From Macrostomum hystrix (taxonomy: Eukaryota; Animalia; Platyhelminthes): DNA of 64,000 nt. Position numbers and translations under genes: made by a program. Below, piece by piece: positions 21,912 through 30,200 of the stretch; positions within the stretch are counted from its first letter, which is position 1; the number at the start of each line of letters is the position of its first letter. Location of the stretch: NCBI GenBank assembly GCA_950097015.1, contig CATNEN010000038.1:34844001-34908000 (forward strand), in the 5' to 3' direction. The notes under the pieces were generated by a model that saw only the letters and a list, made by a program, of their open reading frames with translations, was not told the DNA's origin and ran no database searches.

Positions 21912-22437
21912 CAGGTTGTCCCTCATCCTCCCTACTCCCCAGACCTGGCGCCAGCTGACTATTTCCTCTTCCCAACGATCAAGGGGGAGCTGGGGGGCGT
22001 CTCCATCAGCGGAGACACCTTCAAGGTGGAGCGGGAGCGAGCCTGCAGCCGCCTTTCGCCAGGTGCCTTCGCCTCAGTCTTTGGCAAGTGGATCGAGCGG
22101 CTCAAGAAGTGTGTCGAGATGAAGGGCAACTACGTCGAGAAGGGCTCGAAGATAGCAGAGGACGAAGATGAGGCCTTTTCTGACGTTGACATTTAGAAAA
22201 TTGAAGAAGCGACAAGAACATCCAATATTTCTGGGCAATAGTACACCATTTTTTGGGTCTCTCGACCTGTACTTTTGTTCAATGAGAAAGCGTACAGTTG
22301 TTGCTAGTTTTTTAACCAAAGTTTTGCTAATTGTATGTTAAAATTCATGCTCTTTCAGAATAAATCATCTGCTTTCCTCTAAAGTGTTTAAAAACGAGGC
22401 TGCCGAGACTGTCTCACTTGAACTTGACCGCACCTCG
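21912..22437 (+). mobile_element. Mariner transposon relic (transposase C-terminus and right terminal repeat)
   Basis: Frame 21912..22196 reads VPHPPYSPDLAPADYFLFPTIK...KWIERLKKCVEMKGNYVEK (mariner YSPDLAPxD motif). The element ends ...CACCTCG|TA. Confidence 0.85.
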
Positions 22438-22596
22438 TACCAAGCAATATTGCTTTTAAAGAAGATAGACGTCTGGTTATGACAAAGAACAACTTATATT
22501 ACTCAAAATTGAACTGATTTAGACAAATTCAAACGAACAAATTGTGAGAATTTATTCGCTACCATTAAATTTTAATGGGATTCACGAACTACAAAT

Positions 22597-23340
22597 CTAT
22601 CTGCTTAGCAACACAATTTGCTCTGATCCGGGATAGCTGGGCAATTGCAGGTTCAACTTGGCCGCCAGCTCCGGCGGTACGCAGCGACCGCCTAAGAAAT
22701 GAAACTGGCCGTTAAAGTATGCGGCACACATCTTAGGCGCAGTCAGCGAGACCAGACAGTGTGGCTGGATTGACGGACACTCGAGCAGCGGGCCTAGTTC
22801 CACATCCCAACCGCTGGGTACATCTACACTAACAATGGGCACCTCAGTGCCGGCCAGAGCGGACATCACCGCTTCGAATTCCGGGCGTACCGGCGGCTTA
22901 AATGAAAAGCCAAATAAAGCATCAACAACTAAATCATATGAGGCCTTGATGCAGTCAGCGGTGGGATCTGAATCCACTAGAGGAACGCCAGACCGAAGGC
23001 ACTGCTTCAGAAGGCTACGATAGAGCGGCTTGTCTGTGCGCTTCGGATAATAGACAGCTGGCGCGTAGCCGAACTGGCCTAGATGGCGAGCGCAGACTAG
23101 GCCGTCGCCGCCGTTGTTGCCAGGCCCGCAGCAGACCAGAACACGCGGCCGGTGAGCGTTGCCGTCTAGCTTAGAGGCTGGCGGATACGCCCGGTGCACG
23201 GCCTGGGCGCAGGCTAGTCCAGCCAGTTCCATCAGCTGTTCGACGCTGAATCCATACTCGGTGAACAGCTGCTCATCGACGCGTATAGCGGACGCCTGGT
23301 CTAAATAAGTCCAGCTGCTGCTGCTTTTGCCACTGCTCAT
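22597..23340 (-). CDS. NAXE: NAD(P)H-hydrate epimerase (YjeF_N / AIBP)
   Basis: Motifs EYGFSVEQLMELAGLACA, VCCGPGNNGGDGLVCARHL, VVDALFGFSFK, SVDVPSGWDVE, LVSLTAPK, HFLGGR. First ATG at 23340; a 17-codon in-frame extension reaches a splice acceptor at 23391. Confidence 0.95.
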   Translation of the reverse strand: MSSGKSSSSWTYLDQASAIRVDEQLFTEYGFSVEQLMELAGLACAQAVHRAYPPASKLDGNAHRPRVLVCCGPGNNGGDGLVCARHLGQFGYAPAVYYPKRTDKPLYRSLLKQCLRSGVPLVDSDPTADCIKASYDLVVDALFGFSFKPPVRPEFEAVMSALAGTEVPIVSVDVPSGWDVELGPLLECPSIQPHCLVSLTAPKMCAAYFNGQFHFLGGRCVPPELAAKLNLQLPSYPGSEQIVLLSR

Positions 23341-23560
23341 TGCTCTTCTAGCCACAACTGGGAGGAAGTAAAATGGGTAGCCTAGTCGGAGCTGCAAAAT
23401 GGACAAGGATATGGGACTGCGGAGGTCATTGTACAGTGATAAGTAAATTGTCTTCAAAAGAAAAAAATTACTTCTTTAAATAGTTGTTAAGTGGTCATGA
23501 CCGATCCTTCTGTGACTTGGATTTTTTGCCATCGAACTTGTGTAAGCACTGGCAGCTTAA

Positions 23561-24123
23561 GAGTAGAAAGATTGCGCTATTTTTCCGCTGGGGGATATTT
23601 CAAATACCCACTGCCTGCTTCATGATTTCTTCTAAACCGAATGACCGATTTTCATGAAAGTCTACCATGAACTAACTTTCAAAGCCGTCACCATCGTCGA
23701 GATATTCAGCGATTCCTGTCGAAAACCCGGGTGAAGGACAACTAACATTGCTCTGGATAGCCTGTATGGTCCAATAGTCTGAGTCCATCTGTCGTGGGAA
23801 CCTAAGTTCTCAGCACCGCAGGCACCAGGGTCCCCTTTATCGCCGTTTGGAGAATCGGCGGCGACCGTCGGGACCTTCAACCAAAGCTCCCGATCGGCAT
23901 CACGGGTGACTGTGCCTATATTGGCGGTTTTTGCCACCTGACACCCGACAAGAATCGTTGAATATCTCGACGATGCCGATGTTTGTGGTTGTGGAAGTAG
24001 TTTCATCGGATAGAGCGGAAATGTTGAGCCCGTGGTCTGGATTTCAATGGCGATTTGTTGAATATTTCGGGAGATCATAAATAAATGTGGGCATTTGAAA
24101 TAAGGCCCGTGCCCTTTCTACTG
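23561..24123. mobile_element. MITE with TTAA target duplication (Kolobok/piggyBac-type)
   Basis: TTAA|GAGTAGAAAG ... CTTTCTACTG|TTAA, plus the subterminal inverted pair TATTTCAAATACCCAC / GTGGGCATTTGAAATA. Confidence 0.7.
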
Positions 24124-24290
24124 TTAAGGACCTGAACTGGCTAGGGGCCGCAACTGCTAATAATCGACCAGCGGGTCACGAGCATTTTCGCACCTGGCCA
24201 TTGCGGCTGCAAATATTCGAACCAACACTCCGAGAAGGTTATCTGAAGGTAATATTCTGAACATTAGAAGTCGGATATGTTTTACACTCT

Positions 24291-24540
24291 AATTAATAAT
24301 TAGTGATTGATTACACCAGCCTCAATTGGGTCACAGCTGCAGCCATTGCGCGGCGCATCTGAAGGCTGCGTACAGCTGTTCAGTCCATGGACTGGGGGAC
24401 GCCACACCCACTTTCAATTATCCCAGCTGATGCTGGTACCCATTTAACAGCTGGGTGAACTGAAACAATGGAGAAATAAGTGCCTTGTTAAAGGACACAA
24501 ATCGTTCCAGTGGAGTCGGGAATCGAACACCCGACCTCTT
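24291..24540 (-). mobile_element. tRNA-derived SINE family 2 (Deu/Nin-like core), 5'-truncated
   Basis: Reverse complement is homologous to 43536..43866; B box GTTCGATTCC and core CACCCAGCTGTTAAATGGGTACC. Confidence 0.7.
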
Positions 24541-24889
24541 AAACAACCTCTTTACAGTCTGCAAGAACTATTAAATCAGTGTAAGAGGCAGACGCGGAGA
24601 AGAAGCAGGCACCCCTTAATACTGCTACGAGTAGTAGAAACAAAAAATTTAGTAATCATGATAAAAAAATAAACAATTCGGCTGAATTTAGCGAACCTGT
24701 TCTGTATTTAAAAATTGAAAACATGATAAAAGCTGTTAAAGCAGAATTATCATACTAGAAACATGATAGACACACAACAATGCACAAGTTTGTTTGGTGT
24801 TGTGCGACAAAGCAAAACATGATGCAAAGTGAATGTTAGTAAAACTCGATGGTCTTGACCATGGAGTGCACACGTGGCCAGTAGCAGTA

Positions 24890-25869
24890 TCAATGCAGGT
24901 CCGGCTGACGAGTGCGCGACTCGCGATCGTCATTCCGCACGAATTCAATCATAGCGCGTGACACCTCGTTGTCATAGCGACTAGGCAGTGGCTTGGCTCC
25001 GGTTAGCCAATAATAAATGTCCCAATCATTTGAAGGCTCGTTGATTAAAGCATCGTACATGTCTAACTGACTTGCAGACATGCTAGCCAAGTGTCGATCT
25101 GCGAAGCAGCTTAAAAGTAGGCCGTTTTCAAGCATGCCTCGCTTCCTGCTCTGATAGAGAAGCCGCTGACGCTGCTGTTCAACAGACTCCGGCTGCAGCT
25201 GCTGCTGCTGTTGCTTTTTGCGACGCAGTGGAATCGGCGGCGACCTATATGCGAAATATAGTGTGAAAACACGTTAATTGAATGAAGATGGCACATGAAT
25301 GGGCGCAGGATGGGGTGAAGATGGCACATGATGGGGTGAAGATGGCGCAGGATGGGGTGAAGATGGCACATGATGGGGTGAAGATACAGGAGTCTGACTA
25401 ACCTGGCGAACTCGGCCAGTTCTTGAAACACGCTCAGCCCAGCCAGCTGCGGTGGCGGAGGCGTGAGCACGCCGTGAGCATAGGCCAGCAGGTCCTCGTC
25501 AGGCAGTCGAAGTCGCAATAATTTGTCGAACTCGTCAGCTTCCAAGGCCGTCATGTCGTACAGGCGATCGTCGGCAAAGGCGTGCAGGAGGCCGGCGCAG
25601 TCGGGCAGTTGACGCTGGCGACTCTGGAACAGCAGGCGAGCCTTCTTATCTGGCAGGCTCTCCAGACCGGACGGCTCCGGATGCACTGGCTGTGGTGGCT
25701 CAATGCTGGCGTCCTTGCCTAGCGGCGGGTCGAAGTAGCGCGACCAATAGGTGGACGGCCGGCTCATCACAGGCTGCAGAATTGGCCGACGAAGCAGCGA
25801 GGCGGCTAGGCCGCCACAGCGAATCACGTGCCGACTGAATGGCAACTGAAACAGGTGGGAGAAAATCAT
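24890..25869 (-). CDS. SDHAF2: Succinate dehydrogenase assembly factor 2 with two tandem Sdh5 domains (2 exons)
   Basis: Exons 25869 (or the acceptor at 25845)..25403 and 25244..24890, joined by a phase-2 GT-AG intron. Exon 2 encodes [18 protein letters not shown]...[14 protein letters not shown]...RQPDL. Exon 1 has a presequence-like N-terminus and a degenerate copy of the same domain. Confidence 0.9.
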
Positions 25870-25875
25870 TCAAGT

Positions 25876-26465
25876 GAGGATGGGGTGGATAGAGGAGGAT
25901 GGGGTGGATAGAGGCTGGGGTGGATAGAGGATGGGGTGGATAGAATATGGGGTGGACAGAGGCTGGGGTGGATAGAGGCTGGGGTGGATAGAGGATAGGG
26001 TGGATAGAATATGGGGTGGATAGAGGATGGGGTGGATAGAGGATGGGTGGATAGAGGATGGGGTGGACAGAGGCTGGGGTTGATAGAGGATGGGGTTGAT
26101 AGAGGATGGGGTGGATAGAGGCTGGGGTGGATAGAGGATGGGGTGGACAGAGGCTGGGGTTGATAGAGGCTGGGGTGGATAGAGGATAGGGTGGATAGAG
26201 GCTGGGGTGGATAGAGGATGGGGTGGATAGAGGATGGGGTGGATAGAGGCTGGGGTGGATAGAGGATAGGGTGGATAGAGGATGGGGTGGATAGAGGCTG
26301 GGGTGGACAGAGGCTGGGGTTGATAGAGGCTGGGGTGGACAGAGGCTGGGGTTGATAGAGGCTGGGGTGGATAGAGGCTGGGTGGATAGAGGATGGGGTG
26401 GATAGAGGCTGGGGTGGATAGAGGATGGGTGGATAGAGGCTGGGGTGGATAGAGGATGGGGTAGA
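25876..26465. repeat. 16-bp G-rich minisatellite (GGGGTGGATAGAGG[A/C]T)n
   Basis: Tandem array abutting the SDHAF2 5' end; degenerate units also at about 26925-27020. Confidence 0.95.
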
Positions 26466-27214
26466 TTAAGCGGTAAACAGTGGACTGCTTTATCCCCACA
26501 ATTGCTATTCAACGACTCTTTGAGCATGAAAAAAAATTGACAAATTAGAAAAAGTTAGTTTTCAACTAACAATTTGAAGCTAAACGAAATCTACGATCAT
26601 CTTATGTATTTATTCACTAGATAAAATGAACTTATGTAGCAATTGTACATAAACAGTTGATTATTAGTAATCAGGCAGACAACTAAATAATGAAGATACA
26701 TTTCTAATGTAGTTTTCCTGCATAGTGACGAGTACTATACTTCGTATAAGATAGTATTCGTTAATTATTAGCTGTGCAGGCAGTGCATATTTATGTTCGC
26801 AGTAAAATGTAGTCATGAAAGACTTTTGTAACGGCTTGACACAATTTCTGTGATCACGTGGATTGTAAAAATTGACAACTAGCCCAGTTAAGCGAAATGT
26901 TCTGCCAGGGGCACAGCCATAGTTGAGGATGAGGTGGAGGGATGATGATGGGGTGGATAAAGAAGGATGGGGAGGATAGAGGAGGATGGGGTGGATAGAG
27001 TTGGATAGGGTAGATGGGTAGACTTCTTGCTCATGGACAGACATTGTTTTTACTTAGGCTGAGATTTGAATTCCAGATCCCTCGTCCTCGGTTAGAAATC
27101 TTAAAGCTATTTTCAACTACTCTACATAACCACGTGAACCCAGACGTCGAATAATTGATTATTAAAACATATGCTATTGTAGTGACATTTCAAACACGCT
27201 TGACTGTTGCAGGT

Positions 27215-30200
27215 TCACTTGTGCCCAGAAGCAGCAGCAGCAGCAGCAGAAGCAGCAGCAGATTGTTCATTGTCGCCAGTTCTCGCCGGCAAGCAGCCAA
27301 GCTGAGCCAGCTGATTGCGCAGTTTGGCATCAATATCAGCGCAGCTGCGCTGAAGGACGTGCAGGCCCGTGACAGTCAGCACTAGCAGCTCGCGTACCCC
27401 GTCGCCAGTGACGTCTGCCTGAGCTACGCACTGCACTGGCGTGTTGAACAGCCGCTCGAAGATGAGGGTGTACTCGCCTGGATTGAGAGGCCGGGTAGGA
27501 TATGGGAGAAGGGGATAATAATAATAGTAATTGCGGGAGTGCTGCGGGAAATGGCACATAATTTGGTGACACTAGACCCGCAGACAGCGAGGACGCAGTT
27601 CTGCCCATTTCGCTGACTCCTGAGCACACTGTCCTGTCCTGACTTTCTTATCGTCAGGCAGTGTACACTCTCACTGTGCCTTGGAGGTTGGCCCTCATGG
27701 GCGTAAATTGCACGACAAGCCCCCAAGCCTTCTCTCCGCGGCTGCGCCCCAAATAAATGTGGCCTCGCCGCGGAATCGAGCTCAGGGACCGTGGTGCGAG
27801 AGGCAAATGCGTAAACCGCTCTGCCACTCGCCCCCCTAAGGAGATAGTCATAAAGATCATTATGAGGATGGCCATAGCGATCATTATAAGAATGGTGGAA
27901 GAGAGGGATCAAACATGTTACACATCAATGACAGGATAATATGTGAGATATGACCAATCAGGATAATATGAGGATAATATGTGAGCTATGACCAATCAGG
28001 ATAATATGTGAGCTATGACCAATCAGGATAATATGTGAGCTATATTCTCTCGTCAACCCATCAGCAACTCACCAGTGTCAGGCTGCTTCTTATAAATTCG
28101 TATTCTCTGACAGAAGCTGCCAACAACAATTTCGTCTTCGCCATCCTCGTCAACGTCTAGCGGGCACAGGAAGGCCGGACAGTCTAGTTCGCTGGTGCCA
28201 GGCAAGGCGACTTGTTGCCGGGGCTGACCACCTGCCGAGAACAGGTCGGTGAATAGCATGACAGGCTCTGTGATGGCCGACACTAGCAGGCCTAGTTGCG
28301 GATCGCGCCAGTCGCGATTCTTAGCCGAAGTCGACCAGCAATTTGTCGACGACAGAGTTGACCCGGGAGTTGGCCAGAGCAGGCGGCAGTTGAGAATGCT
28401 GACATCGTATTCCAGACTGCAGCTGGCCAGAATGTCCAGGCTGCACAGGTCGATGGCGCAGACCCGCAGGTTGCCGGTGTCGGTGCCCCAGGCACTCAAA
28501 CGGACTGCGCCGGAGTTGGCTAGAGCGAACTGCGCCTGGAAGACGCTGCGGAGTCAATTTATTAGGAAAGCTTTTGAGAACAAATTATAGGCTTCGAACT
28601 ATAACTATAACTACTTTAAACTCGCTTAAAATCCCGAAGATTGGGATAACGACAGCTTAAATCCCTAAGATTGGGATAACAACTATTTTAATCCCACTTT
28701 AAATCCTCAAGATTGGGATAACAACTATTTTAATCCCGCTTAAAATCTCTAAGATTGGGATTACGACAGCTAAAATCCCTAAGATTAGGATAACGACAGC
28801 TTAAATCCCTAAGATTGGGATAACAACTATTTTAATCCCACTTTAAATCCTCAAGATTGGGATAACAACTATTTTAATCCCGCTTAAAATCCCTAAGATT
28901 GTCATAACGACAGTATAAATCCCTAAGATTTGGATAACAAATGTTTAAATCCCGCTTTAAATGCCCAAAATAGGGATAACGACAGTTTAAATCCTCATAT
29001 TTGGATAATAGCTGTTTAAGTCCCACTTTAAATCCTTAAGATTGGGATAATAACTATTTTAATTCTGCTTTAAATCCCCAAGATTTGGAAATTATTTTTC
29101 CCTTTACTGCATGAAACCCCTAAGACTTTGGCAACTACTATTCGCGACTTACACTAAATAATTTTCCTAGAATTGGAACAACAGCGTGAAAGGATTTAAA
29201 CCTGAAAAAAATATCTTTCGATTGGAAATCAACAGGTCAAAACGCCAATTGTAAAGTACTCACTTTTTCACTTGGTGCTCAATTTCTGGAAAGTACTGTT
29301 GCCTTAAGTTCTCCTTCTCGTGCTGCAATGCAAAAAAGAGGTGGCACCAGACATGAAAAATACGTATTGAGAATTACGTAATTTTTAGGCAAAAAATCAC
29401 AAAAACTGATGCCATATCAGATTTTACTACTCATAACAGTAGCTAAATTGCGAATGTCTTGTTCTTGAGATGCGTCTGTTGATTCGCAATAAAAAAGCTG
29501 GAGAGATTGCTGGTTTAGCTTCATCAGCTTACCTAAAGCGCACATAGCAAAGCGAAAATCACAGAAAACTGATGGATGTTTGTTTTGTTTCATTTGTAAC
29601 AACGTAAAAATCAATAATAGGGTAGGTAGTGTAATTGAGATTTTAGCATAGTTGTTTACACTTGTTACCTTGACACTATTTGGCTGAAATATTTATAAAA
29701 ATGAAGATAGTTAAATAGAAAGCACAGATTTAAGAAAATAATGTTTAATCTCTAATGTCCCTCAACAACGTAAAACATGGGATAGGCGAAAAACTACCCC
29801 ACTAAATCTGTTAAACTTCTTATTCGTAGATCTTTTAAACAAAACACGGGTCGCTTATTACCTGATTGAGAGAGAACACTTCGCAGTCGCAGCCTTTGTC
29901 GTGACGAGATTTTTCGAAGCAGAAGCAGACAAACACGTCCTCCAGCTTGCTTTCGTGTAGCCGGTAGATTCTGAAAAGTTTTAGGAAACGCTATGCTTGT
30001 GCTGATTCTCGCAAACATTTGATTTATAGGGCAGTCAGTTTTAGTCCCCATAAAATTATCGAGGGGATATTCTTTGTTAAAAAAACAGAATAAAGACTTT
30101 GCGAGCATAACTGGCATGTGATTATATCCAAAATGTGGCGCCTAAATTCATTCGCCTACTCGACATTGAATGTACAATCGCACTCGCCACAACAAAACCC

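What the first reader, a model, noticed from the sequence alone, without database searches (positions are those of the whole stretch)
23340..25869. Two adjacent mitochondrial genes whose presequences start at AUG-less phase-0 acceptors: spliced-leader AUG as initiator?
Seen in NAXE: a pyrimidine tract and CAG (CCTTGTCCATTTTGCAG|, exon start 23391) lead into 17 in-frame codons LRLGYPFYFLPVVARRA before the first ATG (23340, MSSGK). Seen in SDHAF2: TTTTCTCCCACCTGTTTCAG| (exon start 25845) leads in frame into [21 protein letters not shown]; the ATG at 25869 lies in the acceptor tract next to a satellite. Both extensions are Arg/Leu-rich with no acidic residues, like presequences. Established: flatworm spliced leaders end in AUG, which can initiate translation, and NAXE makes mitochondrial and cytosolic forms from alternative starts. 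Inference: adding the leader gives M-LRLG... and M-LPFS..., so trans-splicing would build the targeting signal and could control NAXE localisation. This depends on the flatworm assignment.
Basis: partly seen in the sequence, partly recalled or inferred. Interest (0 to 1): 0.85.

Follow-up and report, generated by a model that had tools for sequence, protein, structure and literature searches.

The report
Spliced-leader AUG starts two mitochondrial presequences
In the flatworm Macrostomum hystrix, the NAXE and SDHAF2 messages are cut exactly at the two predicted splice acceptors, so their presequence-like N-terminal ends most likely start at the AUG that ends the trans-spliced leader; this is a further example of a flatworm habit known since 2006.

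Summary
Both genes lie on the minus strand. Each begins at a pyrimidine tract plus CAG (exon starts 23391 and 25845). Each is followed, in phase 0, by an Arg/Leu-rich, acid-free stretch with no ATG (17 and 26 codons) before the first internal ATG.

The genome is the published M. hystrix assembly. Its spliced-leader (SL) genes end ...TTGCATG|GTAAG.

Assembled RNA from three runs, plus one run of a second study for NAXE, stops matching the genome exactly at both acceptors. It carries 5-23 non-genomic letters there. No RNA covers the outrons, including ATG 25869, which is in frame but is spliced away. I could not read those extra letters, so the leader's identity at these two sites is inferred.

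The M. lignano orthologues are Met-less "partial" models that begin at the same codons. The M. lignano SDHAF2 has no Met where ours has its internal one.

SL-AUG initiation is therefore well supported. Mitochondrial targeting is plausible: strong for SDHAF2, moderate for NAXE. Control of NAXE localisation by trans-splicing is not supported; leaky scanning to the widely conserved internal AUG is more likely.

The mechanism is published (Cheng 2006). This scan already noted the same design at other genes of this genome, including the partner enzyme NAXD.

The parts
23392..23408 (-). NAXE trans-splice acceptor tract CCTTGTCCATTTTGCAG. It fits the M. lignano SL-acceptor motif [T/C]TNCAG.
   Evidence: Sequence; motif from PMC8629364; RNA contigs stop matching at 23392 in X5, X6, X8 and X1.
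23341..23391 (-). NAXE AUG-less extension of 17 codons, LRLGYPFYFLPVVARRA. It is in phase 0 with the acceptor and is presequence-like.
   Evidence: The M. lignano partial models P0001 and P0122 start LRLG at the same codon.
23338..23340 (-). NAXE internal ATG (MSSGK...), with G at -3. Probable start of the cytosolic form.
   Evidence: Of 94 long NAXE homologues, 81 keep a Met 26-31 residues before LMELAG.
22597..23391 (-). NAXE (NAD(P)HX epimerase, YjeF_N). Single coding exon including the stop codon.
   Evidence: Pfam PF03853 at 4.4e-40. An unbroken RNA contig covers 22411-23392 with 0 differences. Identity to animal NAXE is 52-76%.
25846..25865 (-). SDHAF2 trans-splice acceptor tract TTTTCTCCCACCTGTTTCAG.
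   Evidence: motif; contigs stop matching at 25846 in X5, X6 and X8.
25867..25869 (-). Genomic ATG, in frame with SDHAF2, lying in the outron. It is absent from the assembled RNA.
   Evidence: Depth over 25847-25900 is zero in all four runs (bin arithmetic in the report).
25768..25845 (-). SDHAF2 AUG-less extension of 26 codons, [26 protein letters not shown]. It is presequence-like. The next ATG is at 25765-25767.
   Evidence: It aligns with M. lignano P0121 from that protein's first residue (ISRHLIR...), and P0121 has Phe where ours has the internal Met.
25403..25845 (-). SDHAF2 exon 1: the extension plus a degenerate first Sdh5 domain.
   Evidence: Pfam PF03937 at 6e-9; contig pieces cover 25401-25846.
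25245..25402 (-). SDHAF2 intron, 158 nt, GT..AG. It contains a 21-nt minisatellite.
   Evidence: A joint 25242>25401 (cut +2) is present in all four runs; TRF.
24890..25244 (-). SDHAF2 exon 2 coding part (intact Sdh5 domain, stop TGA). The 3' UTR runs to about 24680.
   Evidence: Pfam at 6.4e-25; 85% identity to P0121; contigs end at 24679-24682.

Best explanation
Both pre-mRNAs are trans-spliced. The roughly 43-45-nt Macrostomum spliced leader, which ends ...UUGCAUG, is joined to the first base of the exon at 23391 (NAXE) and at 25845 (SDHAF2). Both acceptors are in phase 0, so the leader's own AUG becomes codon 1.

The predicted products are:
- NAXE: M-LRLGYPFYFLPVVARRA-MSSGK...
- SDHAF2: [32 protein letters not shown]...

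These N-terminal stretches are basic, acid-free and hydrophobic. They most likely act as mitochondrial presequences. SDHAF2, a matrix assembly factor, would need one.

In NAXE the leader AUG sits in a weak context (U at -3, C at +4). It is followed 18 codons later by a better-placed AUG (G at -3) that most animal NAXE genes keep. Leaky scanning would therefore give a long mitochondrial form and a short cytosolic form from one mRNA.

The in-frame genomic ATG 25869 is removed with the outron.

Shown: the anatomy, the leader gene, the RNA break points, and conservation of the extensions. Inferred: that the tail is the leader, use of the leader AUG, import into mitochondria, and leaky scanning.
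For: 1. The organism has an AUG-ending leader.
- There are 218 matches within three mismatches (27 of the 100 listed are exact), many of them in rDNA-unit arrays.
- One gene reads GCCGTAAAGACGG...TTATTGCATG|GTAAG. It folds as an SL RNA: three hairpins plus a U-rich single-stranded site, z = -4.2.
- It equals the published M. hystrix SL (PMC10468722 supplement).
- G000 has 220,453,370 bases in 42 contigs, with a longest contig of 35,345,953. These are exactly the published M. hystrix figures.

2. RNA contigs.
- In X5, X6 and X8, one contig per gene covers the whole mRNA. The SDHAF2 intron is removed.
- These contigs stop matching at 23392 and 25846. They carry 23/15/23 extra letters (NAXE) and 22/22/22 extra letters (SDHAF2) at the mRNA 5' end.
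- X1, from a second study, ends at 23392 with 5 extra letters.
- The depth in bins 23389-23509 and 25809-25900 is exactly what the exon bases alone give. The outrons therefore have zero coverage.
- The match running one base into the acceptor G is what a leader ending in G predicts.
- Tails of 22-23 letters fit k=31 graph contigs that break inside a sequence shared by thousands of mRNAs.

3. Both acceptors fit the M. lignano SL-acceptor motif [T/C]TNCAG.

4. Conservation in M. lignano.
- NAXE models P0001 and P0122 are flagged partial and start LRLG at the same codon. Their extension keeps frame, charge and the internal Met.
- SDHAF2 P0121 starts Met-less at ISRHLIR, which aligns with our residue 3. 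Its first Met lies about 100 residues in, inside the first domain. The extension must therefore be translated from a start that the exon does not encode.

5. There is no ATG inside either extension. NAXE's other two frames and one of SDHAF2's are closed by stops.

6. Composition matches the presequences of NAXE homologues. Net charge per residue is 0.17 and 0.15, against a median of 0.13. Acidic residues number 0, against a median fraction of 0.02.

7. The mechanism is established. In S. mansoni the SL AUG is in frame in 28% of trans-spliced transcripts, and more than 40 cDNAs need it (Cheng 2006, as cited in PMC9851317). In E. granulosus the SL AUG is needed for conserved N-termini, including a putative NADH-ubiquinone oxidoreductase and a COX6B-like protein (PMC3510090).
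Against: - The letters of the non-genomic tails were never displayed. That the tail is the leader is therefore inferred.
- All RNA evidence comes from assembled contigs, which drop rare isoforms. A minor unspliced or alternatively spliced form cannot be excluded.
- There is no translation or localisation evidence.
- The NAXE extension is short (18 aa) and proline-rich. It is less amphipathic than typical homologue presequences (maximum hydrophobic moment 0.45 against a median of 0.63).
- No dedicated targeting predictor could be run.
- Kozak rules are borrowed from vertebrates.
Confidence: 0.75

Rival explanations
1. The leader is added, but ribosomes ignore its AUG. Translation starts only at the internal ATGs (23340 and 25767), and the extensions are merely 5' UTR that happens to be open and in frame.
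For: The leader AUG has a weak context, with U at -3. Both internal ATGs have G at -3. Open frames of 17 and 26 codons are not rare by chance, at 0.44 and 0.29. PMC3510090 notes that not all in-frame SL AUGs need be used.
Against: M. lignano SDHAF2 has Phe at our internal Met, and no Met for about 100 residues. Both extensions are conserved as protein, in frame, between species that are only 71-76% identical. A matrix protein starting at [21 protein letters not shown] would have zero net charge over its first 30 residues. The leader AUG is the first AUG on the mRNA. For NAXE this rival is really one half of the dual-start model.
Confidence: 0.1
2. The NAXE extension is a secretory (ER) signal peptide and not a mitochondrial presequence. 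This would parallel the secreted vertebrate AIBP form.
For: The extension is hydrophobic and short, and its amphipathicity is below the homologue median. That vertebrate NAXE/AIBP is also secreted is my own recollection, not something I tested.
Against: Two Arg lie at the C-terminal end of the stretch, and prolines sit within the hydrophobic core. The M. lignano version (LRLGNALLSAALATSRAA) looks like a classical presequence. Mammalian NAXE isoforms are reported as cytosolic and mitochondrial (PMC11715087).
Confidence: 0.12
3. The non-genomic contig tails are not the spliced leader. They could be library adaptor at a true transcription start, or a tiny cis 5' exon. In that case SDHAF2 would start at its internal ATG or use other isoforms.
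For: The tail letters were not seen.
Against: Both break points fall exactly after canonical pyrimidine-CAG acceptors. They are the same in runs of two studies for NAXE. The tails have near-constant lengths under 30 nt, as expected for a sequence shared between many mRNAs. M. lignano models start at the same codons. About 20% of M. hystrix genes are SL trans-spliced (PMC10468722).
Confidence: 0.05

Closest known systems
[quoted passage not shown]
   Same: The leader ends in AUG. It is joined in frame to an exon that lacks its own start. The N-terminus matches orthologues only if the leader AUG is used.
   Different: Those cases come from parasitic flatworms (Schistosoma, Echinococcus). Here it is a free-living macrostomorph. 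The codons opened by the leader AUG form a targeting-peptide-like extension, and in NAXE they lie ahead of a widely conserved second start.
Echinococcus granulosus thioredoxin-glutathione reductase: mitochondrial and cytosolic variants from alternative trans-spliced mRNAs (Agorio 2003; described in PMC2873472)
   Same: A flatworm gene. One gene gives mitochondrial and cytosolic forms, and both mRNAs carry the leader.
   Different: There the two forms come from two transcription starts or acceptors, and the leader peptide lies in an upstream exon. Here a single acceptor was seen, and the choice would be made by the ribosome between two AUGs on one mRNA.
Trypanosoma brucei isoleucyl-tRNA synthetase: dual targeting by alternative trans-splicing (PMC3273800)
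   Same: SL trans-splicing decides whether a mitochondrial presequence is part of the ORF.
   Different: The trypanosome leader supplies no start codon, and two acceptor sites are used.
Mammalian NAXE and NAXD isoforms (Marbaix 2014, as cited in PMC11715087 and PMC9804276)
   Same: The same enzymes. A long form carries a mitochondrial propeptide, and a short cytosolic form starts at a downstream Met. The internal Met is conserved in 81 of 94 long homologues.
   Different: In mammals the upstream AUG is encoded in the gene (for NAXD, in exon 1). Here it is not in the gene at all but comes with the leader.

Membership tests
SL trans-spliced mRNA of Macrostomum | The genome has an SL RNA gene with the leader exon, a GU donor, hairpins and an Sm-like site | tested here: met
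   Identical to the published M. hystrix SL.
SL trans-spliced mRNA of Macrostomum | An acceptor of type [T/C]TNCAG at the first exon base, with no upstream cis donor in use | tested here: met
   TTGCAG|C at 23391 and TTTCAG|T at 25845; motif. No joint into either acceptor is listed, and outron depth is zero.
SL trans-spliced mRNA of Macrostomum | The mature RNA carries the leader sequence directly 5' of the acceptor | tested here: inconclusive
   Contigs carry 5-23 non-genomic letters exactly there in four runs. The letters were not shown, and no tool was left to read them.
SL-AUG-initiated ORF (Cheng 2006 type; 'slORF') | The leader AUG is in frame with the main ORF, with no intervening stop or other AUG | tested here: met
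SL-AUG-initiated ORF (Cheng 2006 type; 'slORF') | The codons between the leader AUG and the next AUG are conserved as protein, or are required for a full-length N-terminus | tested here: met
   M. lignano P0001, P0122 and P0121. P0121 lacks the internal Met.
SL-AUG-initiated ORF (Cheng 2006 type; 'slORF') | Translation demonstrably starts at the leader AUG | not testable with these tools
   Needs ribosome profiling, N-terminomics or reporters.
NAXE / NAD(P)HX epimerase (YjeF_N) | A full-length YjeF_N domain and orthologue-level similarity | tested here: met
   PF03853 at 4.4e-40 over profile positions 2-169 of 169. Identity is 76% to M. lignano and 52-58% to the five other animal NAXE proteins aligned.
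SDHAF2 (Sdh5 / flavinator) | An Sdh5 domain | tested here: met
   PF03937 occurs twice, at 6.4e-25 (intact) and 6e-9 (degenerate). It is single-copy in G000.
Mitochondrial matrix-targeting presequence | An N-terminal stretch with net positive charge and no acidic residues, able to form an amphipathic helix | tested here: inconclusive
   Charge and composition fit for both proteins. The maximum hydrophobic moment is 0.62 for SDHAF2, typical of presequences, but 0.45 for NAXE, near the value for mature protein.
Mitochondrial matrix-targeting presequence | A call by a trained predictor, or demonstrated import and cleavage | not testable with these tools
   TargetP and MitoFates are not available offline, and there is no experimental data.

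The most novel reading that the evidence does not exclude
In Macrostomum the leader AUG may be a systematic device for organelle targeting. The proposal is that a weak-context AUG, supplied in trans, opens a presequence ahead of a conserved, better-placed internal AUG. One trans-spliced mRNA would then yield both mitochondrial and cytosolic enzyme. Both enzymes of the NAD(P)HX repair pathway would be built this way: NAXE here, and NAXD at G000:C39 (CTGCAG|CCG..., extension PPLNRSLSLLASRRLLSV, then ATG). SDHAF2 has the same extension design, and this scan noted the same for several other enzymes (earlier notes that I did not check). Presequence start codons would thus have been lost from many genes and handed over to the leader.
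Probability: 0.35. Interest if true: 0.6.

Novelty: new member of a known kind. Interest (0 to 1): 0.35.

Why it matters
These are two further well-documented cases, plus NAXD in passing, in which a flatworm gene has no start codon of its own for its long form. Gene predictors will therefore truncate such genes or flag them as partial, as happened in M. lignano. For SDHAF2 the truncated model would lose the very signal that takes the protein to its workplace. For NAXE and NAXD, the design offers a simple, testable route to dual localisation in a transgenic-capable model (M. lignano). If the pattern is genome-wide, mitochondrial import of a set of proteins would depend on trans-splicing. That would be a new functional reason for keeping the leader's AUG conserved across flatworms.

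Tried and rejected
- Reading the tail letters.
- Protein searches found no M. hystrix RNA-derived proteins that would show M-LRLG or M-LPFS.
- I looked for DNA fossils (retrocopies) of the leader-exon junctions, using two short typed junction patterns against the genome. There were none.
- I looked for a second NAXE or SDHAF2 gene with its own ATG and presequence. SDHAF2 is single-copy. The only close NAXE relative is a broken fragment that starts 12 nt after ATG 23340, so it says nothing about the extension.
- The cis exon 'ATG|GTAGAC at about 23666' is rejected. That region is a multi-copy repeat, and no listed joint links it to 23391. Ten joints were not displayed.
- Unspliced use of ATG 25869 is rejected as the main form, because depth over 25847-25900 is zero.
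- Pfam on the upstream ORFs (27218-27559 and 28056-28499) and on the spacer ORF (23665-24078) gave nothing.
- The supplement of the genome paper holds no per-gene list of SL sites.
- The joined models (leader Met plus exon, and exon 1 plus exon 2) were never sent to a search or fold tool. Exons were searched separately by reference. The M+extension peptides were used only for composition counts in a script.
Full report
**What is in the sequence**

Both genes lie on the minus strand.

- NAXE is a single exon. The tract CCTTGTCCATTTTGCAG (23408-23392) is followed at 23391 by CTC CGA CTA GGC..., which reads LRLGYPFYFLPVVARRA. The first ATG comes at 23340 (MSSGKSSSSWTYLDQ...). The ORF then runs to TAG at 22597.
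- Pfam gives a full-length YjeF_N domain for NAXE (4.4e-40). The protein is 52-76% identical to animal NAD(P)HX epimerases.
- SDHAF2 has two exons. TTTTCTCCCACCTGTTTCAG (25865-25846) is followed at 25845 by TTG CCA TTC..., which reads [26 protein letters not shown]. An internal ATG follows at 25767.
- Exon 1 of SDHAF2 ends at 25403. A 158-nt GT..AG intron (25402-25245) follows. Exon 2 runs to TGA at 24890.
- Pfam finds two Sdh5 domains in SDHAF2. One is degenerate and lies in exon 1 (6e-9). One is intact and lies in exon 2 (6.4e-25).
- Neither extension contains an ATG in any frame, nor any acidic residue.
- ATG 25869 is in frame with the SDHAF2 ORF (MIFSHLFQ|LPFS...) and lies just after a stop codon. 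A plain genomic start therefore exists on paper.
- In NAXE no in-frame ATG lies between the upstream stop (about 23460) and 23340.

**Organism and leader**

- G000 has 220,453,370 bases in 42 contigs, with a longest contig of 35,345,953. These figures are exactly those of the published Macrostomum hystrix assembly (PMC10468722).
- The M. lignano leader from PMC8629364 matches G000 218 times within three mismatches (27 of the 100 listed are exact), many of them in arrays spaced about 11.7 kb apart.
- One copy reads GCCGTAAAGACGGTCTCTTACTGCGAAGACTCAATTTATTGCATG|GTAAG. It folds into three hairpins with a U-rich single-stranded site (z = -4.2).
- This copy is identical to the leader published for M. 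hystrix, whose authors mark the terminal ATG as a start codon.

Runs X5, X6 and X8 belong to one study. They hold only the exonic 57% of the stretch and lack the SDHAF2 intron, so they are RNA-derived.

- One contig per gene covers the whole message. For NAXE it spans 22411-23392 with no differences. For SDHAF2 it spans 24680-25242 joined to 25401-25846.
- Both contigs stop matching the genome exactly at the acceptor. They go on for 23/15/23 letters (NAXE) and 22/22/22 letters (SDHAF2) that do not fit the genome.
- X1, from a second study, ends at 23392 with 5 extra letters. It also shows the SDHAF2 intron joint.
- The depth of bin 23389-23509 is 1.12 in X5. This equals 4 exon bases x 33.8 / 121.
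- The depth of bin 25809-25900 is 28.5. This equals 38 x 69.1 / 92.
- The outrons, including ATG 25869, therefore have no coverage at all.
- No listed joint enters either acceptor from an upstream exon.

Two small points fit a leader tail:

- The match runs one base into the acceptor's G, as expected if the foreign letters end in G.
- Tails of 22-23 letters are what k=31 graph contigs give when they run into a sequence shared by thousands of mRNAs. The break comes once another mRNA shares the first 6-7 exon letters, and about 7,000 genes are trans-spliced.

That the tail is the leader is therefore a strong inference, not a reading. Contigs also cannot exclude rare isoforms.

**Comparative evidence**

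- The M. lignano NAXE proteins P0001 and P0122 (NCBI, flagged partial) begin LRLGNALLSAALATSRAAMSSWTHL. They have no Met at the start, and their first four residues are the same as at our acceptor. Their extension has the same length class and character, and the internal Met is kept.
- The M. lignano SDHAF2 P0121 begins ISRHLIRGSASLPQLLPLRLRPNFRFSRQSTYW and aligns with our residue 3 onward. Where we have VMSRPS it has RFSRQS, and its first Met lies inside the first domain.
- In that species, therefore, no exon-encoded AUG can open the conserved N-terminus.
- Both acceptors fit the M. lignano trans-acceptor motif [T/C]TNCAG.
- A fused M. lignano model (P0123, SDHAF2+NAXE) shows that the two genes are neighbours there too.
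- About 1.29 kb lies between the SDHAF2 3' end and the NAXE acceptor. Most of it is multi-copy repeat. By the repeat-adjusted 1-kb rule of PMC8629364 the pair would count as an operon. This is not shown here.

**Targeting**

- With the leader Met, the NAXE extension has net charge +3 over 18 residues, and the SDHAF2 extension +4 over 27. Neither has an acidic residue.
- Presequences of NAXE homologues have a median net charge of 0.13 per residue and an acidic fraction of 0.02.
- Amphipathicity is typical for SDHAF2 (0.62) but lower for NAXE (0.45, against a median of 0.63).
- From the internal Mets, the first 30 residues have net charge -2 (NAXE) and 0 (SDHAF2).
- SDHAF2 is named a mitochondrial protein in the source record of its M. 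lignano orthologue, and that it works in the matrix is general knowledge. It therefore needs such a signal.
- For NAXE, 81 of 94 long animal homologues keep a Met 26-31 residues before LMELAG. Mammalian NAXE and NAXD are reported to have cytosolic and mitochondrial isoforms (PMC11715087 and PMC9804276).
- The leader AUG has U at -3, while the internal AUG has G at -3. Leaky scanning is thus the simplest route to two forms.
- Nothing indicates that trans-splicing itself is regulated here.

**Comparison with what is known**

- Use of the flatworm leader AUG as initiator is established. Cheng et al. 2006 reported it in frame in 28% of S. mansoni trans-spliced transcripts and required by more than 40 cDNAs (as cited in PMC9851317).
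- It is conserved in Echinococcus, including for a putative NADH-ubiquinone oxidoreductase and a COX6B-like protein (PMC3510090). It is also noted as a general flatworm feature (PMC12582326).
- Trans-splicing linked to mitochondrial and cytosolic variants is known for E. granulosus TGR and for T. brucei IleRS. Both use alternative acceptors or alternative starts.
- What is particular here is that the presequence start codon is absent from the gene and is supplied in trans.
- This scan already noted the same design at other genes of this genome.
- I followed one of those leads, NAXD. At G000:C39 the first exon follows CTGCAG| in phase 0 with PPLNRSLSLLASRRLLSV before ATG (MSTDS...).
- The M. 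lignano NAXD models are again Met-less. They start PALSRS..., or LQPALSRS when read through the acceptor.
- Both NAD(P)HX repair enzymes thus share the design in two species.

**Verdict**

A mitochondrial role is likely for SDHAF2 and plausible for NAXE. Regulation of localisation by trans-splicing is unsupported. This is a new member of a known kind.

**Procedural notes**

- Exons were searched separately by reference.
- For SDHAF2 exon 1, the query was the ORF reference 25114-25869, scored on residues 9-155 only.
- The joined models were not sent to any search or fold tool.
- Searches used short typed junction patterns.

Noticed in passing
window 24890-25845 (minus strand): SDHAF2 carries an internal duplication. 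A degenerate Sdh5 domain lies in exon 1 and an intact one in exon 2, about 30-33% identical to each other. The arrangement is conserved in M. lignano P0121.
   Followed up: partly
window 25876-26466; also 26947-27015 and 25302-25385: A 16-nt satellite (GAGGATGGGGTGGATA, 36.9 copies) abuts the SDHAF2 acceptor tract. Two shorter arrays share the GATGGGGTG core: one further upstream, and a 21-nt array inside the SDHAF2 intron.
   Followed up: partly
window 23510-24600, peak at 24357-24477: The spacer between the two genes is made of multi-copy repeats. Their summed RNA-contig depth reaches about 5,900, against 30-80 for the genes, with many 90-95% matches and messy joints. It looks like a highly expressed interspersed element. 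An ORF at 23662-24078 has no Pfam hit.
   Followed up: partly
L008 (G000:C38:32721424-32724678), about 1480-1900: This is a broken NAXE fragment (74-80% identical as protein, far closer in DNA over its first ~180 nt, with the middle of the gene missing). It begins 12 nt after the position of ATG 23340. It is joined directly to the same repeat family (..SPNGDKGD..) that lies upstream of NAXE at about 23840. It may be a gene piece captured by a mobile element, or a segmental duplicate.
   Followed up: partly
M. lignano protein P0123 (447 aa): A UniRef model fuses SDHAF2 to NAXE. The two genes are therefore adjacent and on the same strand in M. lignano too. Together with trans-splicing of the downstream gene, this suggests a conserved two-gene operon.
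   Followed up: partly
L013 (G000:C39:12891781-12895035), exon start at 1893, minus strand: NAXD, the partner enzyme of NAXE, has the same design. CTGCAG| is followed in phase 0 by PPLNRSLSLLASRRLLSV and then ATG. The M. lignano models P0124 and P0125 are Met-less at the same place. Its first intron holds a long minisatellite that stays open as VNFLQTNL(T/P)Q repeats.
   Followed up: partly
window 22300-22439: A second set of RNA contigs overlaps the NAXE contig end (22411) by 29 nt. An ORF on the opposite strand ends near 22210. The two look like convergent transcripts with overlapping 3' ends.
   Followed up: no
window 27226-27261: A (CAG)12 run encodes an Ala/Ser-rich tail at the end of the upstream minus-strand ORF (27215-27559). 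That gene lies about 1.4 kb upstream of the SDHAF2 acceptor, and much of the gap is satellite. It may be a third member of the same transcription unit.
   Followed up: no
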